A DNA stretch of 64,000 nucleotides from Klebsormidium nitens (GCA_000708835.1 DF237020.1:124001-188000); one strand, 5' to 3'; positions 15,101 to 59,900 are shown, numbered from the stretch's first letter. Numbers and translations: made by a program. Notes: generated by a model from the sequence alone, not told the origin.

Positions 15101-18100
15101 TACGGGGCGTTCCGCCAAGACGTCATCAAGAGCTTCGTTCAAAACAAAACCGACCAGCAAGCAACTCCCGTTCACAAAACCTTCTGTACACACACACGGG
15201 TCGATGATAAGCCCCGAGTGACGCTGTTCTTGTCACTATCTTGCAGGCGGTTGGGGCGTCGACGGGAGTGCACGGGACGTTCCGCCGCTACACCTGAGGA
15301 AATTCGTCCATATCCGAACCGACCGGCAAGCTACATGGCATTCTGTATACGAACAAGGGTTGATTATAAGCTCCGAGTGACGCTGTTTTTGTCACTACCT
15401 CGCAGGCCGTCGGAGCGTCGACGGGAGTGCACGGGGGGTTCGCATGTACAACACCAGGAAGTTCGTCAAATCCGAACCCACCAGCAAGCTACTCCCGTCC
15501 ACAAGACCCTCTGTACACACACAAGAGTCGACAGAAGCTCCAAGTGACCTCGTTCTTGTCACTACCTTGCAGGCCGTTGGAGCGTCGACGGGAGTGCATG
15601 GGGCGTTCCGCCGGTACACCATCGACGCCCTGACTCTCGTGGCGAAGCCGACCGGCGACAACCACGACCCGACGGCAAAGGTGTCGGCGGCCGCGGCAGC
15701 TGCTGCGAGGCATGACCAGGCGCGAAGCATTTTGAAGATCTCAAGGTGAGGTCAGATTGCTGGTTTTGCCTGGCTTCGCTTGATCCTCGGCACGTTGTCC
15801 CCTACGCTGGTCTTCTTGGTCGACTGCTTCTCTTTTGAGCGAGTCAGGAGCCATTTTAAGCGATTTGTGGTCCCTTTATTTACGGCACTCCTCAGCTCTC
15901 ACAAATACCAAGCTTGGTATGTCTCCATTCTGCTTCGCCTCACCTGTTGAGTTGTTGCTCTGCAACAGGCTTGGATTACGTTTCTTTTGTCCAGAACCTC
16001 TTTTGGCCATGTCAGGAGGCGATCATCTTCTCATTGTCCTTTCACCAGCTGCTTTTGTTAAACTCCATACGCCTCGACTCGCTCAACCTTTGCTGGCCGT
16101 TTCAACGCCTTTCAGGTCCATCTTCCAGACCCAGGAGTGTGAATGAGTGCGTATTCGTCCAATTTGATCCGTAGTTTGCCGGTGTCTTTTCAAAGCAATT
16201 TTCTGGTCCGTGACCTTGACGTCCACCTCTCCTTCTTAGGCTGCTCGAGCCACTCCTTCGCTGCCTAACCAAGCTGCTCATCCGCTTGCCTACCTTTGTC
16301 ATCATTCTTTTACTACTTCGGTTTTTCAATGTTTAATCTGTTTGCCTGACTCGTCTAGGCTACTCGAGTTCTTCCTCCGCTGCCTCATTGAACTGCTCGA
16401 GCCACCTTCTTTACCGCCCTCGGCAAACTGTTCAACCACTCACCCAGCTTTTTGGGACTCGTTGTTTTTACTCTCTTTTTGAATTTCTCTCCCTTAACCT
16501 ATTCAGGCTGCTTGAGTCCTTCCTCCGCTGCCTCAACAACCTGCTCGAGCGCTTCCACCACTCCTTCTTCCTCTACGTCCTCGCCTCGCCCACTCGCTTC
16601 GTCTCCATCGGCGAGTACATGATCCCCTTCGCGCTCCTCCTTGCAACATTGCCGCTCACTGCCGCCGCGCTGGCCGCCAAGGGGTTTTTGGTGCCCTGCT
16701 TACAAGGACAAGGTGAAAGCGCGGGCCAGAAAACGATGTTCGAAGCTGGCAAGAAGTCGGGGTCGGGCAAGGGGACGGGAGAGTTTGCGGAGAAAGTTGC
16801 GAGCGGTGAGCGGACAACAGAGAACGTCCGGCGAACTAATGACGTCACCAAGTCTCAGAGATATGCGCCGGAGAAGAGCGTATCTGGGGAGATGTCGGGC
16901 TGTGCATATCCTGTCAAGTTAAGTAGCAAGAAGCCCGCGAATCAAAATAGGGTGGGCTCGGCGGAGGAAGCCCTGCCGAGTAGCTTATGCCTCCTTCCCG
17001 CCAACTGGACAGGAGCAGCGGCAACCGTTGTCACCGCATACCTGGGGGGAGCTTTTCTGTGGCAGATCACCCCCCTGCTGCTTGACCTCGGAACGGCTGC
17101 CTCGCAGCGGCTGGGAACCGCCGCCGACGCGACGAGCGTCGCAGTGTGGGCCGTCGCCGCACTTCCGCTGCTGACATCAGCAGTGCTCGCGGTCCCTGTC
17201 GGCGCAGAAACCTCTTCGCTCTCGTTTACTGGTGCTGCGTCTGACAAGGCTGGGGTGATAATGGGCGGGAGTGTGCAACACGATATTCGAGAGGAGGGGA
17301 GAACGGGAGCGCGTTTCAGAAAGGCGGACTGGGTTGCATTGAAAAGTGCGACTCTTGCGGTTGCGGGTCTGGCGCTCGGGGCGCTGGTGAACCTTGACTA
17401 CGCGCTCGCTCTCTTGTCGGCGGTCTTTCTGGTCCCCATCTGCTTGTTAGCACGGCCGGTCCGGCTGTTGAACGTCAACAAAGTCGAAGTGTTGCAGAAA
17501 TTGGACGACTCGGCCCCCGTAGCCTCGACAGAAGGGCAAGAAGATGAGAAGCAAGATTTGCGTAAAGTTACAGGTTCTGGAGAGTCCGCGGAAAGTGAGC
17601 GAGGGTCATTGAATCGCGACCAAGTGGAGGGTATTGAAAGCTCGGATGTCCGGGAAAAAGTAGGTTCCGAGTCTCGGTCGGAAGACCGGTCGCCCAGCAT
17701 GATTGCTCTCTGCGAGCAAGTGCGTGCGAACTTTGCAGAGGAGCGGCGACGGAGGCAGGAAGCAAGGGCGGGGTCTCGGGCGGGAAGGCTAAAAGCAACG
17801 GTGAAAGGGGCAGTTCTGTGGGTCCTGGACAGACGAAGGGCGGCGAAAGATTGGGCCAAGCGAAAGCTGGGGCGCCGGCGGACAGGCGACGAGAGGTCCT
17901 CTCGTAAAACAATTTTGAAGCAAGTGGTTCTCCTCTTGGGGGCAACTTTGGCTTCCGTTGGGCCCTTCTTTGTGTTGGGTTGGGAGCAAGAACAGGGACC
18001 TAGCGTCGGCACCCTCGTCCAAAGGGTTAAAAGCTCGAGTTCCATAGCAATGCCGTGGTTGATTGCGGGGTATTTGCCCACCGTTGCCTTGTGCCTGAGA

Positions 18101-18130
18101 GTCATTTTCTCGCCCCCGTTTGATCGCTAG
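12160..18130 (+). CDS. GAA1: GPI transamidase subunit GAA1/GPAA1 homolog, multi-exon
   Basis: Motifs are LLLPAIAKETYVDENALSPG, LVLVTP, WLAKDVIWVLPD, LSQWLADYH, RGGAIQAAVALE, GPNGEMPNMDMF, QAVGASTGVHGAFRRYTIDALTL and RLLESFLRCLNNLLERFHHSFFLYVL...FVSIGEYMIP, followed by several C-terminal TM helices. Approximate exons are 12160-12331, 12987-13349, 13764-13985, 14430-14588, 15573-15745 and 16507-18130. Confidence 0.9.
15030..15625 (+). repeat. Four tandem copies (159-169 bp period) of a GAA1 intron end, acceptor and exon start
   Basis: The motif gctcc(g/a)agtgac...ttgtcactaccttgcag|gc(c/g)gt(t/c)gg(a/g)gcgtcgacgggagtgca(c/t)ggg recurs, with exon-like starts at 15078, 15247, 15406 and the real one at 15573. 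Confidence 0.9.
16230..16560 (+). repeat. Three copies of the acceptor and first ~50 nt of the last GAA1 exon
   Basis: The motif ag|gct(g/a)ct(c/t)gag..c(t)tcct(c/t)cgctgcct(c/a)a...ctgctc follows tag at 16237, tag at 16356 and the real cag at 16504. Confidence 0.8.
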
Positions 18131-22315: not shown

Positions 22316-25300
22316 ATGGGTGGAGGCGGAAGCAAGGTCGATGCAATGGCGGTAGTCAACTCCTCCGTTGACTTTCGACCTCCAATGGGGCCCCCTAGTG
22401 CTGACAACCCTTTGGTCTACTTTGACATCAAGCTGGGGCGCTATGGCGATGCCAAGCCGCTGGGCCGCATTGTGATGGAGGTGTGTTCCTGCTTGCGTAT
22501 ATCTGGGCGAAGAACAGAATGGGTGCAATTCAATTGGAGCAAATGGTCATGTATCTCTGGCGGCCCCACATTCCTCCTTCAGCTCTTGTGTCAGGCAGTG
22601 GCGTCGATTGAATGTGATGCATGTGCGCTTCCAATCAGCAATGGATGCTAGTGCTCATGATGGTGGATGTACTGATCGAGTCCTCTGATTAATGATCATT
22701 TGCCCACTTCCTTCAAGGTAGCACCGTCGAAGCTAGACAAAAAGCTAGACAAATGTAAAGAGTGCACCGCACCTCGAATCCACAAGTACATGGGATTTAA
22801 GGGCCCCGCTTTCACATGGAGCAATGTGGCGCCACAATATCATCTTCGAGGGGGTTCTGCTTTGCATGTTGGCCCTAGTTCCTTCTGGTGTTCAGGTGGT
22901 GATCTGCGAAGAAGTAGAACAGGAAGAAGTTGGAGTTAGCACTGGTTGTTGAGTCTGACTTCCTCTGGTCATGTTTCTAGGCTGATCATATTGGAGGATT
23001 GACTTCGGGTACCAGGGTGGAAGAATAGCACTAGGAACTAGCCACCTTCTCCATGTTGTCATAGTCACCCCGGCTGGGCATTCCCAATCAAATATGTATG
23101 CGCAGTTTGAACCTTAACAAGATTTCCATGCAAGTGAAGTTTCAATCTATGTACTACTGCTCCACATTCCAAGGCGGAACGAAATCTCAAAGCTTGCACC
23201 ATCCTTGATGCAGTTGAAGGCGGACGTTGTGCCTGAGACGGCGGAGAACTTCCTCCAGCTTTGCCAGCGGCCTGAGGGGCAGGGTTTCAAGAACTCAAGG
23301 TTTCACCGCGTTATCCCCACCTTCATGTGCCAAGGTAAGCCATCTTTCTCACGGTTCTCAACGCCAGGTCAGATCGAAAACCACTTGCGTTAGTCATTGA
23401 TGTCCTTCCTCATAATTTTCTTGTCCCCGGCCTTAGGAATCCTCTCATTCTGCATGGAAACCTGTACCCCCTTAGTCTCTACCCTTTGATGCATGAGTCG
23501 CCTGGAGTCTGCGACCTTAAGTTGACTGGCGAGAAGCAATGCTCTTCGTTGAGTCCTCGCTTTTGTCGCCCATAAGGAGACATGTTAGCAACAAGATGTC
23601 ATTGCTGCAGGTGGTGACTTCACCAACGACAACGGCACTGGGGGCCGCTCCATCTATGGGAACAAGTTCCCTGATGAGAACTTCATCCTCAGGCACGTTG
23701 GACCTGGTGAGAGGTCAGCTTTGGTAATCTCGCAAGATTGCAATATCTGACCGAGCAGCATCTTGACCGCCGGGCATAGAACCTCTTCCATAGATCTCTT
23801 TCAGCTCAACCGGTGAGAAATGCTTGCAGGCTCGGATTATTTTTATGGATAGTTATTCCCATCGTCAGAACGGAGTATTCGACGAATTGGCGTTCTTGAT
23901 CCACACTTTTTCCCTTGCAGGCATCCTTTCCATGGCAAACGCTGGCCCAAACACCAATGGATCGCAGGTAAAGCGCCAAGGATTGTTCCAGTGAAGATTT
24001 GTTTCGTCAGCAAAGACAATTTTTAAGAATGTCGTATGCTTTTACCGGCTGTGCAAAAGCCGTGGAAAGCTGTTGCCCTCACTTAGCTGTGCTACGTCAG
24101 CATATCGTGTTGTCATCTTTCGTTTTGCAAAGAACCGGATATCTTCGCAATGGATTAAAGATCTTCGTGCTACAGTAGGTTCTCAGGGTTTTCTGCTCAT
24201 CAAAGAAGAAAGCAGAGGCAGTATATTAGCAATTTCACAATGTTGAGCCTCCGCTTCGAGCTGTCAGCTTTGTTCTCTTGTTCGGAGTACTCGACTAAGC
24301 TTGTTTCTGTCTCTCGTTGCACAGTTTTTCCTCTGTGTTGCTGCTACACCTTGGTAAGGCTTCTGTCTAAGTCTTGCCCGTTGATTCTAATTGCTTGGCG
24401 CCAGATGCGCTTGAAAGAGCATGTGCCACTTGAAGTTGGTTTCTCCTCATGTTTCTTGAATGAGGTTCCATTTGACGAATTTTTCGCACCAATTGAACTC
24501 TCTCAAGCTTGTGTCCTGCGTCTGATGCTAACATCAAGATCTGGGCGTGCATGATTGGCCACGAAACTAACCAAGTGCTCATGCTACAGGTTGGACAACA
24601 AGCACGTGGTCTTTGGACAGGTCGTGGACGTAAGCACAACCGCTTTCGGGCTCTTGTTGTCTCTTACAGAGTGCCAAAGTCGGCCAAAAGAAGTTGTCCA
24701 TGTAGTGTGAGAAGTCCAAGAGACGCAGAAGGATTTTCATGACGGCAAACATTCGTACCTTTCAATTGCAGCAGACAGACAAACACGGTGTCGCGAACGG
24801 CTCTTCTAGATTTTAGAGCGCTTGCGTAATTCTTTTTTTCCCTGAAAGAGATGAGCTTACGAAGGATCAAGGCGTAATACGGACTGGAGCCTGTGTTGAC
24901 GCCTTATGGATCATTTCGTCTTCGGAACTGTCTCTTGTTCACGCTGCTGTGACCACCACTGCAGGGTTACAACGTCGTGAAGGCAATCGAGGCTCTCGGC
25001 AGTAGGAGCGGGGACACGTCCGAGGTACGTTCTAGCTGCTCTTGCTGCTAGGTCGAACGGACGCCTGGTTTGAGGGAGAACAGTTGGGTTGGCTTAAAGC
25101 AATCACCAATTCTTCTCGACCTTTCTACTGAGATTCGATGTGAAGCCTGTTACGTATTGACAAGCTGCAGAGCGGAAATAATACGACAGAACTTGGACCG
25201 ACAAGTATTTGAAGAGATCTGCAGAAAAGAAGCCCACTCTTTCGGCGCTTTGATCTTTCAGCTTTGGTGGCACGTGCAGCCGGACCTGGCAAACGATGTA

Positions 25301-26535
25301 GAAACAAGTGCCTAGGATGCAGCGCGACGTTTGATATTCCAACTCGAAGCATCTGAGCGCTACGTTTGACTGACATTCTTGAACCGTTTGGATTTCGTAT
25401 CCATTGACGATTCCGGAATTAGTGTTCAGCAGGAGAGCTCGGTGTAGGTCATTGCCCCTGCAAAGCCGCAACTCATCGATCCGTGGGCCTTCGTAAGTAA
25501 GCGTACATAGCTTCTCTACTCCTCCCACACTCTCTAACCACTGAAAAGCCTTACCTTCTGAACAACAGGACATCATGATTGCCGACTGCGGTGTCGTTTC
25601 CGCCACAACTGCGCGCGCGTCGTCGGCCGTCGCCCCCAGAGTGGCAGCCCCGGTTAGATCCGCGGCCCCCACTTGGGCGAAGCATAGCCTGAGCGGAGCA
25701 GCTTCAGCGGCAGCGGCTGACGTTGCCAGGCGGGGCAAATGTGCGCCCGTTCGCACGCACACGATCCAGACTGTCCGCCAAAACGCTCCGGGAACAGCTC
25801 GGTTCATGCCGGTCGGAACGGTGGCATCGAGGGGGACAAACAACATGGTGAGCCTCCTTTCCAGAACAGTTTGGGTGGTTCAGATTGACCCGCTGGACGT
25901 GGGTTTATACGGGTTGTCTGTGACTTGTTGCATCCGACAACGATCCCGACGATCGCTGCGATGCTGAGTATCCTGCGGAAGGACTTTGTGACTTAGAGTT
26001 GCCGGCCTGGACCCCGGCTCCTTCCAGTGCTCCCCGCATCAACAATCGACTTCGACCGTAACTTACGAGTTTGCCCTCGTTCCGCCTATAATAAGCAGAG
26101 GCGGGTTCAGCTCGGCCACTCGCGATCTACGTCGTCCTTTCCATGGGTTCTGTGAGCGTAATGTGCCGGTGCCAAGTGCGTAAAGTGCTCCGTGCCTACG
26201 AATTGCGGTTCGATAGTTCTTGAGAACGGGGCCAGTCTTCTGCGCCATGTCTACGTCAGCCCACATTTTCCCGTTCCAAACATCCTGCCGAGACAAATGG
26301 CCGACCACGAACCCGTGCGTCTTTGAGACTGTCACGTGCACTTTACGGCGTCGGCTCACATTTGTCGCTCTGTTGCACTCTTACGGCGTCGCAAACTTTG
26401 CGACCCTGACTTGGATCTTAGGTCACCAGATGTCCTAGCGGTGCTGAAATGCCCTCTCTTCCTCTCCTTGTGCAGACGAGCACAGTGGTCGCCAATGTAA
26501 GAATGCCCATCAGGTCATTGACCTTCGCAGGTTGA
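22316..26535 (+). CDS. Cyclophilin-type peptidyl-prolyl isomerase (paralog A) with a possible N-myristoylation motif and a ~100-aa basic Ala/Ser/Thr-rich C-terminal tail
   Basis: Exons are 22316-22480, 23214-23334, 23611-23706, 23921-23967, 24325-24353 (29-nt microexon [10 protein letters not shown]), 24590-24629, 24965-25024, 25569-25847 and 26476-26535. Motifs are [44 protein letters not shown] and [12 protein letters not shown]. Confidence 0.93.
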
Positions 26536-27392
26536 CCATGGTGCAAGGCACAATTTTGTCAGATGCAATCAGTTGTGAGGCAACCATAGACTTAGTAAAA
26601 CAGGGTTTCTAACGACCCGCGTTGAGTTGGTTATCTGAAATCAATTCGTCAATTTTGATCGACTTGCGGCAGCGCTGATAACACAATAGCATTCTCAGAT
26701 CCTCTATGTGTTCGATGTGTGTCTCCAAGACCTGTGTCTCCTGCCTTTCATTGTAGCATGTTGCCATGTTAAACATCAATATAAGTCAAGTCTGTATGCG
26801 CCGTGGTATAACAGGGAGATGCCAACGACGAGTTGGTTGTTGCATTATTTTTATGCACGCTCTATGAGAAGCTCGTGGCAGTAATCACCATGCACGTTGA
26901 CCAGATGGCAGTCGTTAAATCTGCATCACCAAACTACTTCACCGGAGTCAATAAACTTGAGGGAACACGTTCTTCATATTGGATCTTGCATGGTCAGATT
27001 TGTAGATGTCGAATGGCTATTCTATATGGTATGCGAGTAAAAGCGTCCCAAAAGCGTCATGGCTTCAAAGTTCAGATATCTTAGAAGTGAAGATATTTGA
27101 TAGATATCTGTCCGACGTGTGTTCGTTGCAACCGTCGATGCCCTCCGAACGTCGTTGGCCGATTATCCCTGCAAACAGAAACCGTCCGATAGAAATTTTC
27201 CTTCTTGGACGTTTCCGATGAATGCAATGTTGAGCCAGATCCTTTCCTGGCTAGGCCCATGAAAACTTGAAGTTGCAGGTTGCAGCATTTGCAACTGAAA
27301 GAAACCCCTTGCAGGACGCATCTTGTGACGCTTTTTAGGAGCCAAGAACTGCACAACGGCTCCTTTCTGTGCGCAGGTACTATCCAGCAGCC

Positions 27393-27893
27393 ATGCCTCG
27401 CTCTCAGAAAAATGACAACTTCATTGACAAGACGTTCACCATTATCGCGGACATCCTGTTGCGCACAATGCCGACGAGCTCCCGCGAGAAGGAGGCATTT
27501 GCGTACTACAGGGACGGCATGTCTGCGCAGGCTGAGGGCGAGTATGCAGAGGCCCTGCAGAATTACTACGAGGCGATGCGCCTAGAAGTCGATCCCTATG
27601 ACCGCAGCTACATCCTGTACAACATCGGGCTCATTCACACCAGCAACGGCGAGCACACGAGGGCGCTTGAGTACTACTACCAGGCGCTGGAGCGAAACCC
27701 TGCACTGCCGCAGGCGCTGAACAACATTGCAGTGATTTGCCACTACAGGGGCGAGCAGGCAATTGAGCAGGGCGAGCCCGAGCAAGCGGAGTCACTCTTT
27801 GACCAGGCGGCCGAGTACTGGAAGCAGGCGTTGAGCCTCGCCCCAACCAATTACATGGAGGCGCAGAATTGGCTGGTGGTCACGGGGCGGTCC
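27393..27893 (+). other. ycf3: Ycf3 domain (photosystem I assembly TPR protein), 167 aa, nuclear copy
   Basis: The sequence [24 protein letters not shown]...[54 protein letters not shown]...[14 protein letters not shown]...AAEYWKQA...[13 protein letters not shown] is recognisably full-length plastid-type Ycf3. Confidence 0.97.
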
Positions 27894-30800
27894 AACCCGG
27901 GGGAGAACATGTCGTCAGGCACTCTGAGGGCTAGGGCTAATTTCAGCGAGAGAAACAGCAATGAGTTCAAGCTGGACGGCATGAAGACTGATGCCTTCAC
28001 GGGGGCTGCGGACAACGCACCGGTAGACAGGAAGTCTGTAGACTACCAGCCGCCGTTGGGCCAGCCAAACCCCGAGAACCCTGTTGTGTTCTTGGATGTC
28101 AAGCTGGGACGTGGAGACGGGAAGCAACTTGGACGGATCGTTATTGAGGTAAGGAAATTGGCGACCACGTGTATTCGTGCAATGCTGTGGCGCTGAGCTG
28201 TTCTTGTTATTACAATCTTATATATGGCCAAAGCTTGATTTTCGAGGCATTTTGAAAGGGGTTGATATCTTATGTCAAACTTGTGAAGGGGATTTATGTT
28301 TGGGCTGGCCGGAAAGTGCATGGCCTAATCTCAATCTAAGTGATGAAGACACTCAGCAATCGGATTGTCATTACCACCACCTTCTATAGTGACGAGCTTT
28401 TTGGTGCACAACATGTTCAAAAGTCCTCTTCTGAAGAGAGCCAGCTCTGCTGTGTCAAGTGTCTAGGTTTCTGTTTCCTCATCAAGTGTATCACCCACTG
28501 CGCGTAAGGAAGCCTCTCATTTATGTATCCTCACAAAGGCCAGTGAATATTTACCTGTCTGTTTGGAGACGCCCCTTCTCTATCACCAATTTAGGGGACA
28601 TTTTGATTCTACTGGTCTCGCTTCCTTGCAGTTGAAGAAGGACGTCGTCCCCAAGACTGCGGAGAATTTCCTCCAGCTGTGCCAGCAGCCGGCGGGTCAG
28701 GGTTTCAAGGAATCAAGGTTCCACCGCATTATCCCCGGCTTTATGTGCCAAGGTAAGAGGTTCTTGGTGGAAGGTGGACGCACATGTACCCTGACTAATC
28801 CCAGATTGTGTATTTTTCTGCATCTCCAGCAATTTGATGAATGTAAGAAGTCCCTTTGGAAACTGCAATGATTCTTGCGGAGTAACCTTATGATGGACAA
28901 ACTTGACTTACCACGAGATGGCTGACAGAATAAGTTTAATTAATGTCAAGAATGTGTCTTATCCTTTTCAGGTGGGGACTTCACGGATGACAATGGAACG
29001 GGCGGTCGCTCCATCTATGGCGACAGCTTCCCGGACGAGGACTTTTCTCTGAAGCACACCGGGCCAGGTACGGTTTTTTTCTTGTCTCCTGTCAGTTTAT
29101 CTGCACCAGTTCACTTGTTGACGAGTCTTCTTTCATGCAGATCAGCCTCGCCTCAGCAGATTTGGGTCCAGAGCCATTTTGACACTTGACTCGCATGGTC
29201 CAGGTGGAGGTCATAGCTGTTGTTGCGGCAGATTCGGCATGCATTTGCAGGTTTCGTATTTGCCTCAGCGGTGCAAGTTCACACCTGTCCTCCTGTCTTG
29301 CAATTGACTTTCTGCCTGTTGTTGCTCAGCAGTCCTGTGATGACATTATCCTAAAGTTCATGGTATAGTCATCTTACTGGGACACTCATGGTTCGTTTGG
29401 ATTTCAGGGTGTGGGTAGTGTGCGGCGCAGGTTACTTTCCGGATTTACGTTGCAGTGTTACTTGAATGCTCATTACTACATTAGCTTAGTATAACCTCTC
29501 TTAAGAAACACAGTTCTGCGGCTCCTTGTGCAGGTGTTCTGTCTATGGCGAATGCTGGACCTGACACCAATGGGTCCCAGGTAAGCCTGTTTGCACCATT
29601 ATAAAAAGTACAGCAATTGGTCAATTGGAATCGAAGCTATGGTCCGAGTTGCGTGGCAAGTTTGATCATTCTCACTGCAAATTATTTATCTGAATCTGTT
29701 TGGTCAAAGTCATGCAACAGAGCGTCGGAAGCTCTGGAAAAGCACAGGCTTGTAGCAGAGAAGCAGGCCCGGTTTAATTTGAGAGAAGCAAGGTAGAATA
29801 AGCTCTAAGATAGGCCGTCGAATGGTTAAAAAGTTTAACAAGGGCATGGGGAGGCTGTTTCTGACCTCTCGCCGCTGCCTTGTCGGATTGTATTGAGAAA
29901 AACGCACAACTTTCGTTTCTAAACTGTTTTTCTGACTGCGCAGTTCTTCCTCTGCGTTGCCTCGACGCCTTGGTAAGCATCGTTCAAAGCCTGAAGTAAT
30001 TGACATGCACCATTGACGAGTGGGGCTTCCTGTAGTGGCCAAAAGTCGTTTCCCGCACTCTCCGACTGCTCTTTGAGGCAGCCCATCTCCCATTTGCAGC
30101 CATGTGCAGATTCATGTAGTCATGAGCAGTCAGAGTTTTGGCCACTTCGGCACCCGCTATGAAGTATGTCTCAGGACCGGTTCTCATGGTCATTCGACAC
30201 TCTCTCCTAACATTGCAGGTTGGACGGAAAGCACGTCGTCTTCGGGCAGGTCATTGAGGTAAGGAACCTGCCTCGCATCGCTCTGAGGGTTGTTCCAGCA
30301 GACGACGCTTTCATTTAATGCTCGTAATTCTCAAGTAGTGACGGATCACTTATAAACTGTTACGAGCAAGAGCGAGATCTAGTCTTCATGGGGCTTTGGT
30401 GTTCGTCATCAGACACGTGGCATCCAAGCGGCCCCCATTTTTGAGAGCAAAGCACGTGAAAGGCCGTGCTGACGAGTCGGGGCACCTGTATTCGCTGCCC
30501 TTAGTCTCCTCGTTTCAAGGAGGTGAAAACGAAAGGTCTGCGATTCATTTTTACAAGAAGGAATGAGGGCCTAGATTTGCAGGTATACTCTTAAGTTGGT
30601 GATCCCCTGAAGATCCACAGAGGTTCTAGTTCTGCTACGTTTTGGAGTGTCATGGTCTTGATTTTCAACTCGAATCTGTAACGCGCAGGGCTACGAAGTC
30701 GTGAAGGCGATCGAGGCCATTGGGAGCCAGAGCGGGGAGACGTCCGAGGTAGGACCTTTTGCGGAATCATTGTTGTCACGGCTTCTTTTATGTGGGGTCA

Positions 30801-32001
30801 AAGGGTTTGCGGATCCTCGCGCCCTCTGAATCTTTGGACGACGTCAGCCTCTGGCCGAATATGGTCGTATCGGACACAGTTGCCGAAAAAGTTCCTCAAG
30901 GCCGGTCCGTTTTACAAGACCATCGCACTCATGCCTGCTCCAGAGCACGGGCAACGAAGTGCATCCGTCACTTGATGCACAATCTATCCTATTCCCTATT
31001 TTTCCCTCTGTGTCTACCAAAAGGTCTGCTTTCTTGGTCTTGAAATGAAGCCTTTGCAAGGACCCAGATCACCACTTCTTGTTTTCCACGTTGAATCTCG
31101 AAGCGCTCGATCACGGCACAGCCGCTGTTTGCCGCCCCCACTCGCCAGTAGTATGTGGGTGATTAAGTTGACCCGCCTCCGCATCAAGTAGGGCAAACTT
31201 TGCAAGATATCTTTACATCTCGGATCGTGTCAGCTCGTCACGGCCGTCAGCTCCCATCTCTGTGTCCAATCTGTTGCCCGCTTAGCACACCGTCCCTTGC
31301 TTTCAGGACGTCATGATTGCCGACTGCGGCGTCGTGTCAGCCAAGGTCACGGCCCACGTGGTCGCCCCTGCGACGCTCCCGCGGGCCCCGCTCCGTTCGG
31401 CCCCTGTCTCCCCAGCCTGGGCGAGGTCATCTCTGGGTGGAGCCGCTTTCCAAACGGCTTCGGATGTTGCCCACGGTGTTCGGACGGGGGTTGTTCCTAG
31501 GGCGGCGGTCCGAACGTCCGCTCCTAGGGTGGCCCGGTTCGTGCCGGCGGTGGTTGTTGCTGCCGGGACCGCGCCTCAGTTGGTGAGCCATGTAACTCTC
31601 AAGTCTTCGAAAGATTATTGCCATGAGGAGTAGCAGCGACACTTACCCCAAAAGCTGAACTCGGATTTAACGATGCTCCGCACCCTTTGATAGCTTAACT
31701 CCCTGGCTATTCCCACCCGTCCCTGGGCTTCGGTATATACCTTCATGGCGCTTAATCTTAATGAGTCCGACCGAAATGTTTCATTCGGAACCGTTGAAAA
31801 ATGAACGAGCACAAGCCACCACTTTGTTTGCGGATTTCAGCTGCTTAACTTCACTTTTGTGGCCGGAATATTTGCGACTCGGACAACTTCTTTCGTCTGG
31901 TCACGCAGGGTGGTGCGCTGATTTCTGCTGCGTTTCTCTTGCAGGCGCGCTCGTTTGTTGCTGGAGCCAGGATGCCCGTTCGAGCCTTCGCCTTTGCATA
32001 A
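27393..32001 (+). CDS. Ycf3-cyclophilin fusion protein (paralog B); true start may lie upstream of 27393
   Basis: Exons are (27339/27377/27393)-28148, 28632-28752, 28972-29067, 29534-29580, 29944-29972, 30219-30258, 30689-30748, 31307-31582 and 31945-32001. The first exon encodes full Ycf3, a linker and the cyclophilin N-terminus with no stop. All 8 intron positions match paralog [17 protein letters not shown] and [14 protein letters not shown] are intact. Confidence 0.88.
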
Positions 32002-45825: not shown

Positions 45826-47100
45826 TCAGCGGCAATGTTCTTTGAATTCCAAAGCAAGGAATCCTGCGCCTTCTCCTACAGTGCTAAGGTCGTAGTATCG
45901 GTCACGTGGATACTTCACCTCCACCTCATTCAGATTTGGACACATGGATGGGAACGTCCAAAGGGCATCCGCATTGGGGAGACTCCCGTCAAGGATGACG
46001 TGCTTCAAAGAAGAGAACTTTGCACCGCCGGTGGCAGCCCAGTATGTGTGGTCAATAACCTGCCCATCTGCAACACTACTGACCGTTGTCGAAGAACCGC
46101 GATCTACAATGACCAGATTCTTCAACTTTGGACAGCCCTTGGCAAGAGGTGCCAAGTCGTTTAGATGAAACGCCAAAGGCACTACCTTTTCTCCAACCAG
46201 TGACAGTGATTCCAACTTTGGAACGTGTTGACCAATCAGAGACAAGGTCTGAGGTGTGATTGGAGCAAAGTCCTTCTCCTGAAGAAAGCCCTCTTCGAGC
46301 ATATTCCTCATCTGGTCATGTATAGTATCGAATGACCCATTCCAGACTCCCAACTCAAGAGAGACAATGCTTCTTCCGGCCTTTTCTAAGAAGCTTAGCA
46401 AAGCTCTCTCCTTGGTGAAGGTGTTCTTAAGGTCTACCTTTCTCAGCGGCAAGGTAGAGTTTCTTTGAAGGTCAATTGAACGCACTTTGCAAATGCCGGT
46501 CACATTCAGAACCTCCAGTTGAGGACACGCTAAGTAGATGGACTCAAGCTTGTGTGCCCCACTAATGTCAAGGCTAGTCAGTTTTGGTAAATGGAGATTC
46601 AGGTTACAGAGCCCTTTGCCTTCTTCAGAATACAAGGACTCTTCAAGGTAAAAGATGGACAGATCCTCCAAATTTGGGCAATTACGGTGCAAAAGATCCA
46701 CCACCCTGTCATCGAACCAGCTTGCAGATTCAACAGATTCAGTGAAACCTGCGTCCAAGTCCGCGTGAACTGAAAGTGTGAGAATTCTGATCCACTCTGT
46801 TCGTCTAGTGTGCAAACCTCCAGCAAAAAGCGACAAAACGCTTTCCTGGTATACAGTGATATCAACTTCCTCCCAGAGCACCTCATCATCTGCGATAGAG
46901 CGGAATCGTTTGCAAACTTGCGCAAGCGTTCCTACACACCCCTTCAGATTTGTGAACAACCTTGGAAAGCGGTAGGGAGGTCCGGAGCGCTTGTATTTCT
47001 TTTCTAACATTTCCAGCTCTTGCTTACCAAGGACATCTTGGAAAATTGACAGAACCAGGTTGTCGGGCAGCTTGTCAAAATGGCAAACTTCGGGAGCCAT
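45826..47100 (-). CDS. F-box / leucine-rich-repeat protein, apparently one coding exon
   Basis: The first ATG in the open frame is at 47100. The F-box reads FDKLPDNLVLSIF...LAQVCKRFRSIADDEVLWEEVDI, followed by LRRs (CPNLEDLSI, LPKLTSLDISG, CPQLEVLNV, VPKLESLSL, CPKLKNLVI, CPNLNEVEV). Confidence 0.85.
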   Translation of the reverse strand: MAPEVCHFDKLPDNLVLSIFQDVLGKQELEMLEKKYKRSGPPYRFPRLFTNLKGCVGTLAQVCKRFRSIADDEVLWEEVDITVYQESVLSLFAGGLHTRRTEWIRILTLSVHADLDAGFTESVESASWFDDRVVDLLHRNCPNLEDLSIFYLEESLYSEEGKGLCNLNLHLPKLTSLDISGAHKLESIYLACPQLEVLNVTGICKVRSIDLQRNSTLPLRKVDLKNTFTKERALLSFLEKAGRSIVSLELGVWNGSFDTIHDQMRNMLEEGFLQEKDFAPITPQTLSLIGQHVPKLESLSLVGEKVVPLAFHLNDLAPLAKGCPKLKNLVIVDRGSSTTVSSVADGQVIDHTYWAATGGAKFSSLKHVILDGSLPNADALWTFPSMCPNLNEVEVKYPRDRYYDLSTVGEGAGFLALEFKEHCR

Positions 47101-47384
47101 CTTTCTCTGAGATGCATTCGCCTCAGCCTCAGGCCGCAGGCTTGCCCTCCAATGCCAGCTAGCTGGCTCCACACAGCGCGCTTGACTCAAATCTTTGACA
47201 AAGCCACCCGCAATGCATGGTCAAGACTCAAGCCTCCTGTGTAGCTTTTGACAGACCGGACAATTTGACACTACCGGAAGTGTCACCTCTAGGTTGGTAC
47301 ATGGACGTAGGTACGTAAGTTTGCTAGTCTTACAAATTGCGTCACTGGTGATGTCACACAGGGTTAACACCCTAACATACACTA

Positions 47385-55025: not shown

Positions 55026-56950
55026 CTTTGCTTGCTACTTTACTGCGCCTGCGACTCTAGGCTCGTGACCTCAATGAAAAGTTCACGCTGTGCAAAGCAG
55101 CCGCTCTTACAAACACACTGAAGGGAGAAGGACAAAGGATTATCCTTGGTCTGTATGTCCGCTTAATTTCCTCACTTGCGATCCCCCTCCTAGCCGCAAT
55201 CTCCACAAATCGATGACCAAAGGCAACCCTAAAATTCTCCATTCATGAAGAGAAGGCTCGGCCTTCAATCCGGGCAACTTTCTGGTTGCGTGCCGCCTCA
55301 GGCTGTTACATATCGGAGCTTGTGGTCTTTGACACCAGAATTGCAGCCTAACGACAACGTTAGAGGCGGACGCGCTTTGTCGCGTAGGTTTGTCTAACCA
55401 GTACGTCATTTGCCCCCTTAACGTGGATTATTTTGGTGAACTCTTTTGCCATCTACTTTCGACGGCATAGCCAGATAAAAATAGTGTTAAGGAACCTCCC
55501 CGCGCGGGAAAAGCTTAGACTGCACACTGCAACTTCAAGTTCAAGTCACGTTCCAAGTTCAGCCCTGCAACAATTTCATCATTTGAGCTTCACTTTCTCG
55601 GCAAATAGGGCGCACAAGTGGCGGCTATACACCAACAGCCTGGACTTGCAGGTCAAGGGCAAGGGATCAACGAAGGCTCCCTTTGAGGGTAGGCGACTTG
55701 CGTTGTCCACTTTCAAGAAAGACATTAGCGTTTGCACAGAGCGCTGTGGAATCAGGTCCAGCAAGTGGTCCCCAAAGGAGCGCCTGTCCAGAGGAGCGGT
55801 GTACTGTCTTCCTTGGATAGGCGCTCTCCGCGAGCGAAGTTCGTTCAATTTTCTGATAAAGAAATAAGGTACACGTCAGGTTTTACCAATAGCATTGGGC
55901 CCCAGGGGCCAGCTCCGAGGGGCGGGGTGGGCTGGGACGACTTCTTGCAAAATGAAGATGGTAATATGCTGATATGATGCAGGAAGGTTGCATCCCCAAG
56001 GTTTTGAGGTGAGATATATCTGCTGACTTTCTGGTTTTGAGAAGGACTTGGATGCAGAGATGCAGAGTGTTCCCTCTCCTATCACTGTGCACCTGGTCGT
56101 GCTACAGGCGAAGAGCAGCATCGTGTTCCTGGGGAGAGGTTCATGTCCTTTTCCTGTCTGTTTGAAGGGCGTGGTCTTGCAAATTGTTAACAATGGAAAG
56201 GCGCAAGGTGCATCATGCTGCTGTTTTTGTGCAGTTTCTTGATGGGACTGTTTGCCGTTCTGCTCGTGTACCTTCTCTGAGCACACTCTAAGTTGCAGCA
56301 AATGGCTTTCCTGGTGGTTTGTTTACGAGCACGATTTGATTACCGGGTCTCAAGCTTTGCCGCTGGTTTCGGGTCCACTTTACCATCATGTTTTCAACTG
56401 GTAGAGTTCTGAGCAAGCACAGGTGGTTCTTTGTTGTGTGCTTTAGGTACCCTTATTACCTCTGCACTTTGGTCAGAGTTAGGGTTCAGCACTACCTTGC
56501 CCCATGGTTTGAGAGTCTGGCGGTAATAAGTTCATCGCTTACCGCAGTCGCTATCAAAGTAGAAGAACTCTTCATAAGCTCATACATCCATTTTGTAGGC
56601 TTTGCGAGCACTTTGGTTTCATTGGCGTAGTGCTCAGAGCGGACCAGGGAATAGTCTTATTTATGTTGCAGGAGATGCGTCATGCTTGTGCCTTCGATTG
56701 GTTTGTAGTGACATTTTGGTGGCGTGTGATACGTCCATATATCTTTGCACTAGGTTGCTCTTGCCCAATCAGCTCATTCAAGTGATTTTACGGTTTAAAT
56801 AAAAGTAGTTCATTGGCAGGCAGTTCTTTTAGCTGTTGATTAACCATCTTTTGCTATGTTTTGCAGCATCTGTCCACGGTGACGGCAAGCCCCGCCTGCT
56901 CCTCAGCTCGTCTCCTTCTTTACAACCACACGACTGCGCTTCTAAGTGGT

Positions 56951-59900
56951 ATGACCATGGATGAAGCAAGGCACAGGAAACTTGCCAAGGGCTACGCCTA
57001 CGAGCCAATGTCAGGCCCCGTTGCCACGAGCGGCTATCCAGACTTCGAAGGCAAACGGCAGCGGCAGCACTCTGCCAAGTATTCAGACGAGATGGTTCCG
57101 ACGCCTCGTTCAAGCCAGGGTCAGTGGGACGCGCGCGGGGTAAAGCGCAAGGCTGAGCATGCAAATGGGGGGGCCCACTGGCAGGAGGGGGGCAGGGGGG
57201 AGTATGTGGATGAAGACGTGAAGGCCGCAAAGAAGAAGGCCAAGAAGGAAGCCCTCATGCGGCAGTTGGCGGAGCTGCAGACGGCTAAGGCAACGCTTCG
57301 TCAGCGGGAGCAAGTGTTGCTGAGCGGTGGGTCTGCAAGGGACGACGAGTCGCGGGACGCTTGGCCGCAGAACGGGGGTGCGGCGCCCAGGCCGATGCAC
57401 CCCCCCCAGCAGCCGCAGCTGTCGCGGCAGGCGTCAGACGGCAAGGAGAAGCGGACGCCGAAAGCCAACGTGCTCTATGCAAATGAGTACGTGTCGGCAC
57501 CGACTGGGCAGGACCACTTAGCAGCCCACGCGTTGAGCAAGGGGGGATCGAACGGGAAGGCGGCGAAGCGGCCAGCCGGGGGGGATGCGCGTGCCGAGAA
57601 GATTGAAAAGGAGCGGGTGAAGCGGCGGGCGGCGATCTGGAAGAAGATCCTGGTGATGCACAACAGGAAGCTGATGGGGGACCGCCTGAACTCGTGGTAT
57701 TTTGCGGAGCCGGTCGACCCGGTACAGCTCAATATCCCAGACTACTTTACCGTGATCAAGCACCCGATGGACCTGGGGACGATCCGGAAGAAGCTGCAGC
57801 GGGAGCAGTACGCGAGCTTCGAGCAGTACGCGGCAGACGTGCGCCTGACGTTCCGCAACGCGATGACGTTCAACGGGCCCGAGAACAACGTGCACAAGGC
57901 GGCAAAGTTCCTGCTGCACGAGTGCTTTGATCAGCAATGGTGGCCCCCCATCATGCGAGACATTCAGCAGGACCGTGAGCAGACCAGGATCGAGGAGGAG
58001 GCGTTAGCTGAGGCCGAGTGGCAGGCCCCAAAAGTTCCGAAGGCCCCCCCGGCTGCGAAGAAGGCGCCCAAGGCCGCGAAGGCCCCCTCCGCAGCGCCGG
58101 CGTCGAGCAAGCAGAGCGGCGGGGGGTACGCGCAGCAGGTGCACAGGCCCCCCCCGCCGAAGCCGAAGGTCAAGCCGATGTCGATGGAGGAGAAGCGGGA
58201 CCTGAGCATCGCGCTGAGCGACATGGGGGCGGATCTGCTGACGGGGATCGTGGAGATCATCAAGGAGCGGCACGCGGAGCTCATGTCGAACGACGAGGAG
58301 CTCGAGCTCGACATTGATGCGCTGGATGATATCACGCTGTGGGCGCTGAAGCGGTATGTCGAAGAGAAGCAGGGGGAGGAGGCGGAGTCGCGGCCACCAG
58401 CGCAGGTGAGCTGCTCTTCCAACCATGTGACAGCATTTCTTGTTTAGTAGTGGGTTCACCAGCAGAAATGCTCTTCATGGAGCTCTTAAGCCATGTTTTC
58501 ACCTCATTTGGGTCGATATTTGTTCTGAGGTTCAGGGGGTGGGTTCTGGAGCAATTTGCAGGCAGTTGGAAGAGTCCCATTGGGGCTTGTCGAGGGGTTC
58601 TTGTGGAGGACCTTTACTTGAAAACGTTCAAGGCAGGGGCCCCAGGTCTTCGCCTCCTAGGCGTGCAGATGAGTCTCCAGGCTCCTTTTCAAGCTCTACC
58701 CTTTCCAGGCTCTACCCCCTACTAGAGTGAATCATCTGCACTTCTTGATCCCCTTACTGTTTGATATCATAATATCCTCATTCTTCACCCGTTCATCTCT
58801 TGTGCTTCTCTCTGCTTTGGTTCTCTGTGTGATTATCCCTCCAGTTTGAACGGTTTTCAGCTTTCACACATCTTTTTTTCTTGTTACTCCTCCTCCTTAC
58901 CCCCCCAAATCTGAACGGTTCTTCTGTATATCTCACATCGTTATGTTTGTTTCTCTGTGTTCTATCCCCTCAAGTCTGAAGGATTCTCTGATTTTTCACC
59001 CCTTCGTTTTTGTTCCTCCTTCTTATTCCCCCAAGACTGCAAGGTTCCGATTTCCACCTCTTATTTTTCATCCTCCGTCCCCTTATACCCCAAATTCTGA
59101 ATGGTCTCTTCTTTTTCATTCAGGAGGGCGACGGTTCCACCAACCACGACCGGGAGCCCATCACGCCCGCAGGGGGGTCCTCTGAGGAGGTGCCCTCGAA
59201 GCAGAAGAAGGCAAAGGGCCAGAAGTCGAGCTCCACCAGCTCTAGCAGTGGCTCCGAGTCGTCGGGCAGCGGTGAGTTCGCAGAGCTGAGATGCGAACTT
59301 TGGAGAGCTGAGGTTCTCGTTTGCTGACCAGTGGCGCCAGCATTTTTGTAATCACACATGGGACTAGTCGTCGGGAGAAGCAGTGGAGACTGTGCGCAAA
59401 AAGTGTGCATTCGATCTTCCCTAAAGTACCAGCATCTGACTGACATTTGTCAGCATCTGAGTAAAAAAAGACGACTTTTGTCAGCATCTGAGTGTACAAA
59501 GATAGGCGCAGGGAGGCAAGAAATAAGGAAACAAAGAACTCGGTTTTGAAGACCAAGCGTCTTGTGATGGCTTAAGGCCGTTGGTAACATCGGCACAATG
59601 GGATGTCTTGAACCTGCGTTCGTTGGAGAGGCAGCTCTTCCATTTGGATTGAAGCCGAATGGTCAAAAGTTACTGCCCCTTTCAAGTCATGGTTGACTTG
59701 GGAATGTGGATCCCGATCGTGCTACCTTTTTGCACGGCATAAAAGAAGCGCAGAAGCAAAGACCCTGCTTATGGCTATTGGTATGCTGCTTTCTGCATCT
59801 GATGAAAGGAGCGCAGAAGCAAAGCGGAAGCAAGTCAAGTCCTTGGTTTGGCCATGGTCAGGACGCCGTACTGGAATTTCTGCTGAGCTTCTCGTCAGTG

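What the first reader, a model, noticed from the sequence alone, without database searches (positions are those of the whole stretch)
27393..32001. Nuclear-encoded Ycf3 fused in frame to a cyclophilin: candidate endosymbiotic gene transfer plus domain fusion
SEEN: a full 167-aa Ycf3 (27393-27893) runs without a stop or intron through a ~45-aa linker into a cyclophilin whose remaining 8 exons are intact. The catalytic Arg in FHRII and the CsA-binding Trp in TPW are both present. The Ycf3 protein is highly conserved, yet its codons are GC-rich like the flanking nuclear exons: by hand count, 23 of 30 codons in R31-E60 end in G/C. It has no group II introns. Residues such as [16 protein letters not shown] and ICHYRGEQA resemble the plastid version more than the cyanobacterial one. 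ESTABLISHED: ycf3 is normally plastid-encoded, AT-rich and essential for photosystem I assembly, and it carries group II introns in land plants. TPR + cyclophilin combinations (Cyp40 type) act as co-chaperones. INFERENCE: this is an old, selected nuclear copy rather than a fresh NUPT, and may be a chimeric PSI assembly factor that couples the TPR scaffold to prolyl isomerase activity. I know of no described Ycf3-cyclophilin fusion, but I cannot search for one.
Basis: partly seen in the sequence, partly recalled or inferred. Interest (0 to 1): 0.96.

Follow-up and report, generated by a model that had tools for sequence, protein, structure and literature searches.

The report
Nuclear Ycf3 fused to a cyclophilin
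In the streptophyte alga Klebsormidium nitens, the photosystem I assembly factor Ycf3, normally chloroplast-encoded, sits in the nucleus and is expressed as one spliced mRNA fused to the front of a cyclophilin; the gene is real, under selection and already annotated, it has no N-terminal transit peptide, and how the protein reaches the chloroplast is unexplained.

Summary
Window 27393-32001 (+) holds a 9-exon gene. Its 493-aa product is letter-for-letter GAQ81119.1, "putative ycf3 precursor" of Klebsormidium nitens. The product is a full Ycf3, a disordered linker of about 40 aa, a CypD-like cyclophilin, and a tail of about 100 aa.

- **Expression:** RNA contigs from four runs carry the Ycf3 exon spliced to the cyclophilin exons. 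All eight introns are removed.
- **Conservation:** A relative's contig (81% aa identity) has the same nine exons. Against it, dN/dS is 0.02 for Ycf3 and 0.05 for the cyclophilin, with dS about 1.3.
- **Origin:** The nuclear Ycf3 copies form a clade sister to the plastid Ycf3 of other Klebsormidiophyceae. This points to a lineage-specific transfer, not a fresh NUPT.
- **Host gene:** Ycf3 was grafted onto the second copy of a tandemly duplicated cyclophilin.
- **No N-terminal transit peptide:** The 5' UTR is contiguous with the genome, and in-frame stops lie just upstream of the start codon in all orthologues.
- **The tail:** It is basic, free of acidic residues and transit-peptide-like. It predates the fusion and occurs in a green-alga-wide cyclophilin family whose members start with a myristoylation-type MGxxxS motif.

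The import route is the open question. The gene is annotated, but I found no paper that describes the fusion.

The parts
27279..27392 (+). 5' UTR of the fusion mRNA, as far as the RNA contigs reach. It contains no ATG and has an in-frame TAG.
   Evidence: RNA contigs start at 27279 (X4), 27327 (X7), about 27323-27332 (X10) and 27383 (X1), and run collinear with the genome into the Ycf3 ORF.
27393..27893 (+). Ycf3 (PafI) coding part, residues 1-167. It has no intron and GC3 of 0.80.
   Evidence: NCBIfam NF002725 at 275 bits. 83-86% identity to streptophyte plastid Ycf3. 86 of 86 conserved positions kept. AF2 pLDDT of 85-98.
27894..28022 (+). Linker, residues 168-210. It is predicted disordered and fast-evolving, and holds a conserved internal Met (27981) in '[10 protein letters not shown]'.
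   Evidence: AF2 pLDDT below 50 for residues 177-210. 47% aa identity to the L001 orthologue. Motif conserved in P0001-P0003 and P0125.
28023..28148 (+). End of exon 1. It codes the cyclophilin family's N-terminal extension ([15 protein letters not shown]) and the first beta strands.
   Evidence: Aligns with exon 1 of the upstream paralogue CypA and with green-algal homologues. Donor GT at 28149, confirmed by RNA joints.
28632..30748 (+). Cyclophilin exons 2-7: 28632-28752, 28972-29067, 29534-29580, 29944-29972, 30219-30258, 30689-30748.
   Evidence: All joints are present in RNA contigs of four runs. Pfam PF00160 at 1.7e-47. Best solved relative is human PPIF at 3e-73.
31307..31336 (+). Start of exon 8: end of the cyclophilin domain ([10 protein letters not shown]).
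31337..31582 (+). C-terminal tail, first part (residues 394-475). It is rich in A/V/R/P/S, has 1 acidic against 12 basic residues, and is predicted disordered.
   Evidence: Composition. AF2 pLDDT of about 34. dN/dS of 0.2 against L001. No homologue outside close relatives by phmmer.
31945..32001 (+). Exon 9: the last 18 residues ([18 protein letters not shown]) plus the TAA stop.
   Evidence: The loose end at 31583 in all four runs reads the sequence found at 31945 onward. The L001 orthologue has the same mini-exon. The family-wide C-terminal pattern is R followed by four hydrophobic residues.
22316..26535 (+). Upstream tandem paralogue CypA (P0152, 298 aa). It has an MGGGGSK start, the same exon structure and the same kind of tail, and its own transcript ends at about 26700.
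   Evidence: tblastn exon map. Pieces are identical to P0152. RNA joint 25847>26476 and no joint to the Ycf3 exon.

Best explanation
This is a functional nuclear ycf3 gene of Klebsormidium nitens. It arose by a lineage-specific plastid-to-nucleus transfer.

**Shown.** An intron-less plastid ycf3 reading frame landed in frame at the 5' end of the second copy (CypB) of a tandemly duplicated cyclophilin gene. It replaced that gene's myristoylation-type MG start and took over its expression. The gene is transcribed as one mRNA. Translation from the native Ycf3 Met gives a 493-aa protein: a Ycf3 TPR module, a disordered linker of about 40 aa, a CypD-like PPIase with an intact active site, and a disordered basic tail of about 100 aa.

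**Inferred.** The plastid copy has been lost in Klebsormidium. The fusion protein, or a Ycf3 fragment cut from it, must therefore enter the chloroplast and do Ycf3's job in photosystem I assembly. The attached cyclophilin is either a passenger or a helper foldase.

**Inferred and weakest.** An N-terminal presequence is excluded, so import must use a non-canonical signal. The best candidate is the transit-peptide-like C-terminal tail, which the host cyclophilin family already carried.
For: **Gene model and identity**
- Searches give the gene model and its domains.
- The product is identical to GAQ81119.1, 'putative ycf3 precursor [Klebsormidium nitens]'.
- The locus is nuclear. It has spliceosomal GT-AG introns, and its neighbours are Gaa1, F-box/LRR and bromodomain genes.

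**Expression**
- In four runs from four studies, one RNA contig spans the 5' UTR, Ycf3 and cyclophilin exon 2 (word depth 150-750). All downstream introns are removed, and intron 1 has no coverage.

**Age and selection**
- A metagenome contig of a relative (L001) has the same tandem CypA plus Ycf3-CypB and the same nine exons.
- dN/dS against it is 0.02 for Ycf3, 0.05 for the cyclophilin and 0.2 for the tail, at dS of about 1.3.
- 86 of 86 conserved Ycf3 positions are kept.

**Origin**
- The five nuclear copies form a clade (100/95) sister to the plastid Ycf3 of Hormidiella, Entransia and Streptosarcina (88/79).

**Loss of the plastid copy (indirect)**
- ycf3 is not among the 90 genes retained in all 20 streptophyte plastomes in PMC4877394. 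The losses that paper lists for Coleochaete and Zygnematophyceae do not include it.
- Entransia, Chara, Chaetosphaeridium, Mesostigma and Zygnema have plastid Ycf3 entries. No Klebsormidium plastid Ycf3 appears among the 120 best hits.

**No N-terminal extension**
- The 5' UTR has no ATG within the 114 nt covered by RNA.
- In-frame stops lie 3 to 21 codons upstream of the start codon in all four orthologues. In L001 and L003 there is no AG between the stop and the ATG.

**The tail**
- It has 1 acidic against 12-13 basic residues, is rich in A/V/R/S/T/P, and has no transmembrane stretch.
- It is predicted disordered.
- More than 60 green-algal homologue clusters carry such a tail.
- A C-terminal reverse transit-peptide-like signal is known for TOC159 (PMC8836251).
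Against: - Nothing here shows where the protein is located or what the tail does.
- The known C-terminal transit-peptide-like signal of TOC159 targets the outer envelope, not the stroma.
- The cyclophilin family that donated the tail starts with an N-myristoylation consensus. That suggests a cytosolic, membrane-associated protein rather than an imported one.
- Loss of the plastid ycf3 in this species was inferred from a figure legend and from database silence. The plastome itself was not searched.
- Logan contigs drop rare isoforms, so a minor transcript with another 5' exon cannot be excluded in K. nitens itself.
Confidence: 0.8

Rival explanations
1. Borrowed presequence or polyprotein. Read-through or alternative splicing joins the transit-peptide-like tail exon of the upstream cyclophilin (CypA) to the Ycf3 exon. 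Ycf3 would then get a presequence, or be made as part of a Cyp-Ycf3-Cyp polyprotein.
For: CypA lies 1.5 kb upstream on the same strand. Its tail exon ends at a GT donor (25848), and AG sites lie upstream of the Ycf3 ATG at 27278 and 27376. An earlier first-reader note (s1-324496) proposed this route.
Against: - RNA contigs join 25847 to 26476, which is CypA's own last exon with its own stop. None joins into the Ycf3 exon.
- From 27279 the frame meets a TAG before the ATG, and from 27377 the frame is shifted (and reading).
- In the L001 and L003 orthologues a TGA lies 3 codons before the ATG with no AG in between, so no conserved route exists.
Confidence: 0.03
2. The fusion protein does not enter the chloroplast. 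It has a new cytosolic or envelope-surface role, while PSI assembly relies on a ycf3 copy elsewhere: one retained in the plastome, or a second nuclear copy with a normal transit peptide.
For: There is no N-terminal transit peptide. The host cyclophilin family carries a myristoylation-type N-terminus. The known C-terminal transit-peptide-like signals lead to the outer envelope. The plastome was not searched directly.
Against: - dN/dS of 0.02 and 86 of 86 conserved positions show that the constraint of a working Ycf3 is unchanged.
- No other Klebsormidium Ycf3, plastid or nuclear, appears among the 120 best database hits, although its proteome and plastome entries are in those sources.
- The PMC4877394 legend implies that ycf3 is lost from some streptophyte plastome, and Klebsormidium is the only candidate left.
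Confidence: 0.12
3. Artefact: a recent NUPT or pseudogene, plastid contamination, or a misassembled junction that only mimics a fusion.
For: Plastid DNA fragments in nuclear assemblies are common. The Ycf3 part has no intron while the cyclophilin part has eight exons.
Against: - GC3 of 0.80, like the neighbouring nuclear exons.
- Spliced RNA contigs cross the junction in four independent studies.
- Five independent assemblies of relatives carry the same continuous ORF from Ycf3 through the linker into the cyclophilin.
- Strong purifying selection.
Confidence: 0.01

Closest known systems
Plastid-encoded Ycf3 (PafI), photosystem I assembly factor with three TPRs
   Same: It matches the full length of the equivalog model and shares 83-86% identity with streptophyte plastid proteins. 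It keeps every highly conserved position and gives a confident all-helical TPR model.
   Different: It is encoded in the nucleus, uses nuclear codon usage, has none of the group II introns of streptophyte ycf3, and is covalently followed by 326 further residues.
Functional plastid-to-nucleus transfers that became active by joining a host gene. From my own knowledge, not checked here: rpl32 joined to the Cu-Zn SOD gene in Populus and mangroves; infA, rpl22 and accD transfers in angiosperms.
   Same: An organelle reading frame gains expression by integrating into an existing nuclear gene. The organelle copy is then lost.
   Different: In those cases the host gene supplies an N-terminal transit peptide upstream of the immigrant. 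Here the immigrant sits at the extreme N-terminus, the host contributes everything downstream, and no presequence exists.
Cyp40 / PPID-type TPR cyclophilins
   Same: One polypeptide combines a cyclophilin PPIase with a three-TPR module.
   Different: The domain order is reversed (TPR first). The TPR module is Ycf3, not an Hsp90-binding co-chaperone TPR. The cyclophilin's best solved match is PPIF (CypD), followed by PPIA.
Green-algal 'MG-cyclophilin-tail' family (K. nitens CypA = P0152, Chlamydomonas CHLRE_13g588100 = P0180, Mesostigma P0161, Micractinium P0159, and others)
   Same: The cyclophilin half shares 70-79% identity with them. It has the same N-terminal extension motif (Y.PPLG.PNP.NP), the same tail type and the same C-terminal ending.
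   Different: The MGxxxS start is gone and is replaced by Ycf3 plus the linker.
Reverse transit-peptide-like C-terminal sorting signal of TOC159-family receptors (PMC8836251; Lung and Chuong 2012)
   Same: It is a C-terminal segment with the physicochemical character of a chloroplast transit peptide: basic, free of acidic residues, and rich in hydroxylated and small residues.
   Different: That signal delivers a membrane protein to the outer envelope. Ycf3 has to work on the stromal side. No sequence similarity was tested or expected.

Membership tests
Ycf3 / PafI | Full-length match to the curated family model above its cutoff | tested here: met
   NF002725 equivalog: 275.4 bits against a cutoff of 143, profile positions 1-168 of 173.
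Ycf3 / PafI | Conserved residues of the family retained | tested here: met
   86 of 86 positions that are at least 95% conserved in 98 plastid-type sequences.
Ycf3 / PafI | TPR fold (three repeats) | tested here: met
   Pfam TPR_1, TPR_2 and TPR_12 hits. The AF2 model has eight helices over residues 5-163 at pLDDT 85-98.
Ycf3 / PafI | Acts in the chloroplast in PSI assembly | not testable with these tools
   Inferred only, from the unchanged constraint and the presumed loss of the plastid copy.
Cyclophilin-type PPIase | Pro_isomerase domain with the active-site residues (Arg, Phe, Met, Gln, Ala-Asn-Ala, Gln-Phe, Trp-Leu, His) | tested here: met
   PF00160 at 1.7e-47. The residue-by-residue alignment to human PPIF shows all of them identical.
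Cyp40-type TPR cyclophilin | N-terminal cyclophilin followed by a C-terminal co-chaperone TPR domain | tested here: not met
   The order is TPR (1-167) then cyclophilin (229-392), and the TPR part is the Ycf3 equivalog.
Functional endosymbiotic gene transfer | Nuclear location, transcription and correct splicing | tested here: met
   GT-AG introns and nuclear neighbours. Spliced RNA contigs in four runs.
Functional endosymbiotic gene transfer | Purifying selection after transfer, and an origin inside the host's own plastid lineage | tested here: met
   dN/dS of 0.02 at dS of 1.3. The nuclear clade is sister to Klebsormidiophyceae plastid Ycf3.
Functional endosymbiotic gene transfer | Organelle copy lost | tested here: inconclusive
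   The evidence is indirect. ycf3 is absent from the list of genes kept in all 20 streptophyte plastomes (PMC4877394). No Klebsormidium plastid Ycf3 appears among the database hits.
Functional endosymbiotic gene transfer | Acquired N-terminal transit peptide | tested here: not met
   The first ATG of the mRNA is the native Ycf3 start. In-frame stops lie upstream in all four orthologues.
Green-algal MG-cyclophilin-tail family | MGxxxS N-terminus | tested here: not met
   The paralogue CypA has MGGGGSK. The fusion has Ycf3 in that place, with only an internal 'GMKTDAF' left.
Green-algal MG-cyclophilin-tail family | Basic tail of 65-105 aa, poor in acidic residues, ending in R followed by four hydrophobic residues | tested here: met
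   The tail is 101 aa with 1 acidic and 12 basic residues, and ends ...VRAFAFA.
Recent NUPT | Plastid-like base composition and no selection or expression | tested here: not met
   GC3 of 0.80. Expressed. dN/dS of 0.02.

The most novel reading that the evidence does not exclude
The basic tail of about 100 aa, free of acidic residues, at the C-terminus of this green-algal cyclophilin family is a genuine C-terminal chloroplast import signal. If so, a plastid gene could become functional in the nucleus simply by landing upstream of a tail-bearing gene. Klebsormidium Ycf3-Cyp would then be the first natural stromal or thylakoid protein imported through a C-terminal transit peptide. The same signal would operate in Chlamydomonas, Chlorella, Ulva and Mesostigma homologues.
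Probability: 0.25. Interest if true: 0.9.

Novelty: new variant of a known kind. Interest (0 to 1): 0.62.

Why it matters
- **A rare transfer.** As far as I know, ycf3 is plastid-encoded throughout the green lineage, and recent functional transfers of photosynthesis-related genes are rare. This one is a dated, lineage-restricted transfer in a close algal relative of land plants. It is expressed and strongly constrained.
- **An unusual activation route.** The immigrant gene sits at the very N-terminus of a host protein and has no presequence. Either chloroplast import can be driven by something other than an N-terminal transit peptide, or an essential PSI assembly factor works in an unexpected way.
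- **Directly testable.** Localisation and import assays of the full-length, tail-less and tail-only proteins would answer this.
- **Practical bearing.** The result bears on efforts to move plastid genes to the nucleus.
- **An unstudied family.** The work also exposes a widespread, uncharacterised family of green-algal cyclophilins with a myristoylation-type start and a transit-peptide-like tail.

Tried and rejected
1. **Upstream coding exon or borrowed CypA tail.** Rejected by RNA joints and in-frame stops.
2. **Intron-1 retention giving a free Ycf3.** There is no coverage at 28300-28499 in any run.
3. **Homologues of the tail.** phmmer against 1.84 billion representatives found only the relatives' own tail exons. 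The ESM Atlas features and structure search was uninformative.
4. **Search with the relative's linker (P0002, residues 165-262).** Only P0002 and P0003 were found.
5. **Metagenome scan with linker patterns.** It found only ordinary Ycf3 C-termini and no further fusion loci.
6. **DNA similarity between the linker and CypA's 5' region.** None beyond the cyclophilin coding part.
7. **Transmembrane or tail-anchor reading of the tail.** The highest 19-residue hydropathy is 1.37, and the stretch is not conserved in L001.
8. **Literature.** No paper in the library links ycf3 with a cyclophilin fusion or states a nuclear ycf3 in Klebsormidium. The Chlamydomonas gene id gave no hit. CYN28 papers concern a different, FtsH-related cyclophilin, and I could not link it to this family. 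Vallon 2005 and Fu 2023 are not held. No supplementary file of the plastome or genome papers mentioned ycf3: none is held for two of them, and the one held file had no hit.
9. **Initial guesses of a dinoflagellate, Paulinella or euglenid origin.** Dropped once the Ycf3 hits proved to be streptophyte.


Full report
**What is in the sequence.**

The ORF at 27369-28196 (+) contains, from the ATG at 27393, a complete Ycf3. It scores 275 bits against the NCBIfam equivalog NF002725 (cutoff 143), covering profile positions 1-168 of 173. Pfam finds only its TPRs. The frame continues without a stop into the N-terminal strands of a cyclophilin, up to a GT donor at 28149.

Eight further exons with canonical GT-AG borders complete a 1482-nt CDS:
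- 28632-28752
- 28972-29067
- 29534-29580
- 29944-29972
- 30219-30258
- 30689-30748
- 31307-31582
- 31945-32001

Its 493-aa translation is identical to P0124 = GAQ81119.1, 'putative ycf3 precursor [Klebsormidium nitens]' (UniRef A0A1Y1HV92, 'peptidylprolyl isomerase'). The window is therefore K. nitens nuclear DNA, and the gene is already annotated.

GC3 is 0.80 in Ycf3 and 0.74 in the cyclophilin, while the introns have 0.40-0.52 GC. Neighbouring ORFs encode Gaa1, an F-box/LRR protein and a bromodomain/BET protein, which are ordinary nuclear genes.

**Expression.**

I laid Logan RNA contigs of four runs from four studies on 25700-31699.
- In every run, one contig runs collinear with the genome from 27279-27383 through the whole Ycf3 exon, and is spliced from 28148 to 28632 and from 28752 to 28972.
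- The other introns are also removed: 29067>29534, 29580>29944, 29972>30219, 30258>30689, 30748>31307.
- A loose end at 31583 reads the sequence found at 31945 onward, which gives the last intron.
- Word depth is 150-750.
- Intron 1 has no coverage, so a read-through product ending after Ycf3 is not a notable form.

The fusion is one mRNA and not an annotation merger.

**The N-terminus.**

The RNA contigs show no joint into the AG sites upstream of the ATG. The 114 nt of 5' UTR they cover contain no ATG and hold an in-frame TAG.

In the orthologous loci L001, L002 and L003/L004, in-frame stops lie 3 to 5 codons before the ATG. In L001 and L003 there is no AG between the stop and the ATG.

The protein therefore starts with the native [10 protein letters not shown] of Ycf3, and it has no N-terminal transit peptide. 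This also disposes of the earlier idea that the upstream cyclophilin's tail exon is spliced onto Ycf3. That exon joins 25847>26476, its own terminal exon with its own stop.

**Relatives, age and selection.**

A database search found three further ORFs that cover Ycf3, the linker and the cyclophilin start: P0001 at 96% identity, and P0002 and P0003 at 83%.

Their contigs (L001-L005) come from a JGI metagenome and Logan assemblies. L001 carries the same two genes in tandem, CypA then Ycf3-CypB, and I could rebuild the orthologue with the same nine exons.

Compared with L001:

| Segment | aa identity | dN/dS | dS |
|---|---|---|---|
| Ycf3 | 96% | 0.02 | about 1.3 |
| Cyclophilin | 91% | 0.05 | about 0.95 |
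| Tail | 56% | about 0.2 | 1.3-1.9 |
| Linker | 47% | about 0.16 | saturated |

All 86 positions that are at least 95% conserved in 98 plastid-type Ycf3 sequences are kept.

In a maximum-likelihood tree the five nuclear copies form a clade (100/95). That clade is sister to the plastid-encoded Ycf3 of the other Klebsormidiophyceae: Hormidiella, Entransia and Streptosarcina (88/79). The transfer therefore happened inside this class, on the line to Klebsormidium, and is old enough for synonymous sites to be near saturation between species.

**Is the plastid copy gone?**

I could not search the plastome. The indirect evidence is as follows.
- In Lemieux et al. 2016 (PMC4877394), the legend listing the 90 genes retained in all 20 streptophyte plastomes has ycf1, ycf4 and ycf12 but not ycf3. 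The losses the paper spells out for Coleochaete and Zygnematophyceae do not include ycf3.
- Plastid Ycf3 entries exist for Entransia, Chara, Chaetosphaeridium, Mesostigma and Zygnema.
- No Klebsormidium plastid Ycf3 is among the 120 best hits, and no second K. nitens Ycf3 either.
- Civan et al. 2014 (PMC4007539) score both ycf3 introns as absent and mention 'several other' missing genes, shown only in a figure.

By elimination, the loss is in Klebsormidium. I rate this as likely but not shown.

**The host gene and the tail.**

Upstream at 22316-26535 lies CypA (P0152, 298 aa). It has the same intron positions as CypB and about 70% identity to it.

CypA starts MGGGGSK, an N-myristoylation consensus. 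CypB has Ycf3 plus a linker in that place. A conserved '[10 protein letters not shown]' at Met197 (27981) may be the old start.

Both paralogues end in a tail of about 100 aa. It is 22-26% Ala and 11% Arg, with 1 acidic against 12-13 basic residues and no transmembrane stretch. A last mini-exon ends ...RMPxRxxxFA.

phmmer with the tail finds nothing outside the close relatives. A search with the cyclophilin domain, however, shows that the nearest homologues share one architecture. These homologues span the green algae: Chlamydomonas CHLRE_13g588100, Volvox, Chlorella, Micractinium, Coccomyxa, Ulva, Bryopsis, Cymbomonas, a pedinophyte and Mesostigma. The shared architecture is:
- an MGxxxS start;
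- about 30 aa with the motif Y.PPLG.PNP.NP;
- a CypD-like domain;
- a tail of 65-105 aa with 0-3 acidic and 10-18 basic residues.

Anchored at the C-terminus, the last four residues are hydrophobic or small, and Arg is enriched at position -5. An R-(P/R)-F motif recurs 25-45 residues from the end. The tail is thus an ancient feature of the host family and predates the fusion.

AlphaFold2 on an alignment of 73 sequences models Ycf3 (residues 8-170) and the cyclophilin (211-395) with pLDDT mostly above 85. The linker (177-210) and the tail (397-493) stay below 50.

The cyclophilin's best solved relative is human PPIF (3e-73), with every active-site residue identical.

**How it most likely works.**

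Shown:
- ycf3 has been relocated to the nucleus.
- It was grafted in frame onto the 5' end of one copy of a duplicated cyclophilin gene.
- It is expressed as one mRNA and is under the constraint of a working Ycf3.

Inferred:
- The product must reach the stromal face of thylakoids to assemble PSI, either intact or after cleavage in the linker.
- An N-terminal signal is excluded, so the candidates are the C-terminal tail or an internal, uncleaved signal. The tail has transit-peptide composition, is disordered and is conserved under mild constraint.
- A C-terminal 'reverse' transit-peptide-like signal is documented for TOC159-family receptors (PMC8836251), but it leads to the outer envelope.
- The myristoylation-type start of the parent family argues that those cyclophilins are not imported.

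I therefore give the tail-import idea about one chance in four. Whether the PPIase contributes to PSI assembly or is a passenger is open.

**Comparison with what is known.**

It is a true Ycf3 and a true cyclophilin. It is not a Cyp40-type protein, because the domain order is reversed and the TPR has a different origin.

As an event it resembles known functional organelle-to-nucleus transfers that were activated by joining a host gene. It is the mirror image of them: the immigrant is N-terminal and gains no presequence.

No paper in the searched library describes a Ycf3-cyclophilin fusion or a nuclear ycf3 in Klebsormidium. GenBank's product name shows that the annotators saw the Ycf3 similarity.

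**Verdict.**

The gene is already in the databases, but its biology is undescribed. That covers its origin by grafting onto a tailed cyclophilin, the absence of a transit peptide, and the family-wide tail.

Interest is moderate to high because it offers a concrete, testable case of non-canonical chloroplast targeting and a rare late transfer of a photosynthesis gene.

Noticed in passing
window 22316-26535 (+); proteins P0152, P0159, P0161, P0180, P0189, P0194, P0215, P0224 and about 55 more: A cyclophilin family found across the green algae. Its members share an N-myristoylation-type MGxxxS start, a Y.PPLG.PNP.NP extension, a CypD-like domain, and a basic tail of 65-105 aa without acidic residues that ends in R plus four hydrophobic residues. 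I know of no described function for the tail.
   Followed up: partly
window 27981-27983: An internal Met (residue 197) in the motif [10 protein letters not shown] is conserved in all orthologues, although the linker around it is poorly conserved. It may be the former CypB start, and could serve as a second initiation site that gives free cyclophilin.
   Followed up: partly
window 27277-27279: The longest RNA contig (run X4) begins at 27279, immediately after an AG. This could mark an acceptor of a 5' UTR intron rather than the transcription start. It would not change the protein, because an in-frame TAG follows.
   Followed up: no
window 16388-18130 (+), 45826-47190 (-), 56861-58447 (+): Long ORFs with Pfam hits to Gaa1 (GPI transamidase), F-box/LRR and bromodomain plus BET. 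These are ordinary nuclear neighbours.
   Followed up: no
window 25103-25846 (-): A 247-aa antisense ORF overlaps the GC-rich tail exon of CypA and has no Pfam hit. It is probably a by-product of the biased composition of the tail-coding strand.
   Followed up: no
window 31114: One run (X4) reads T instead of C in low-depth intron-7 sequence, probably a strain polymorphism.
   Followed up: no
L001 3288-7719 and L003 313-3389: The relatives' contigs keep the CypA paralogue directly upstream of the Ycf3-CypB gene. The duplication and the graft therefore both predate the split of these Klebsormidium-like species.
   Followed up: partly
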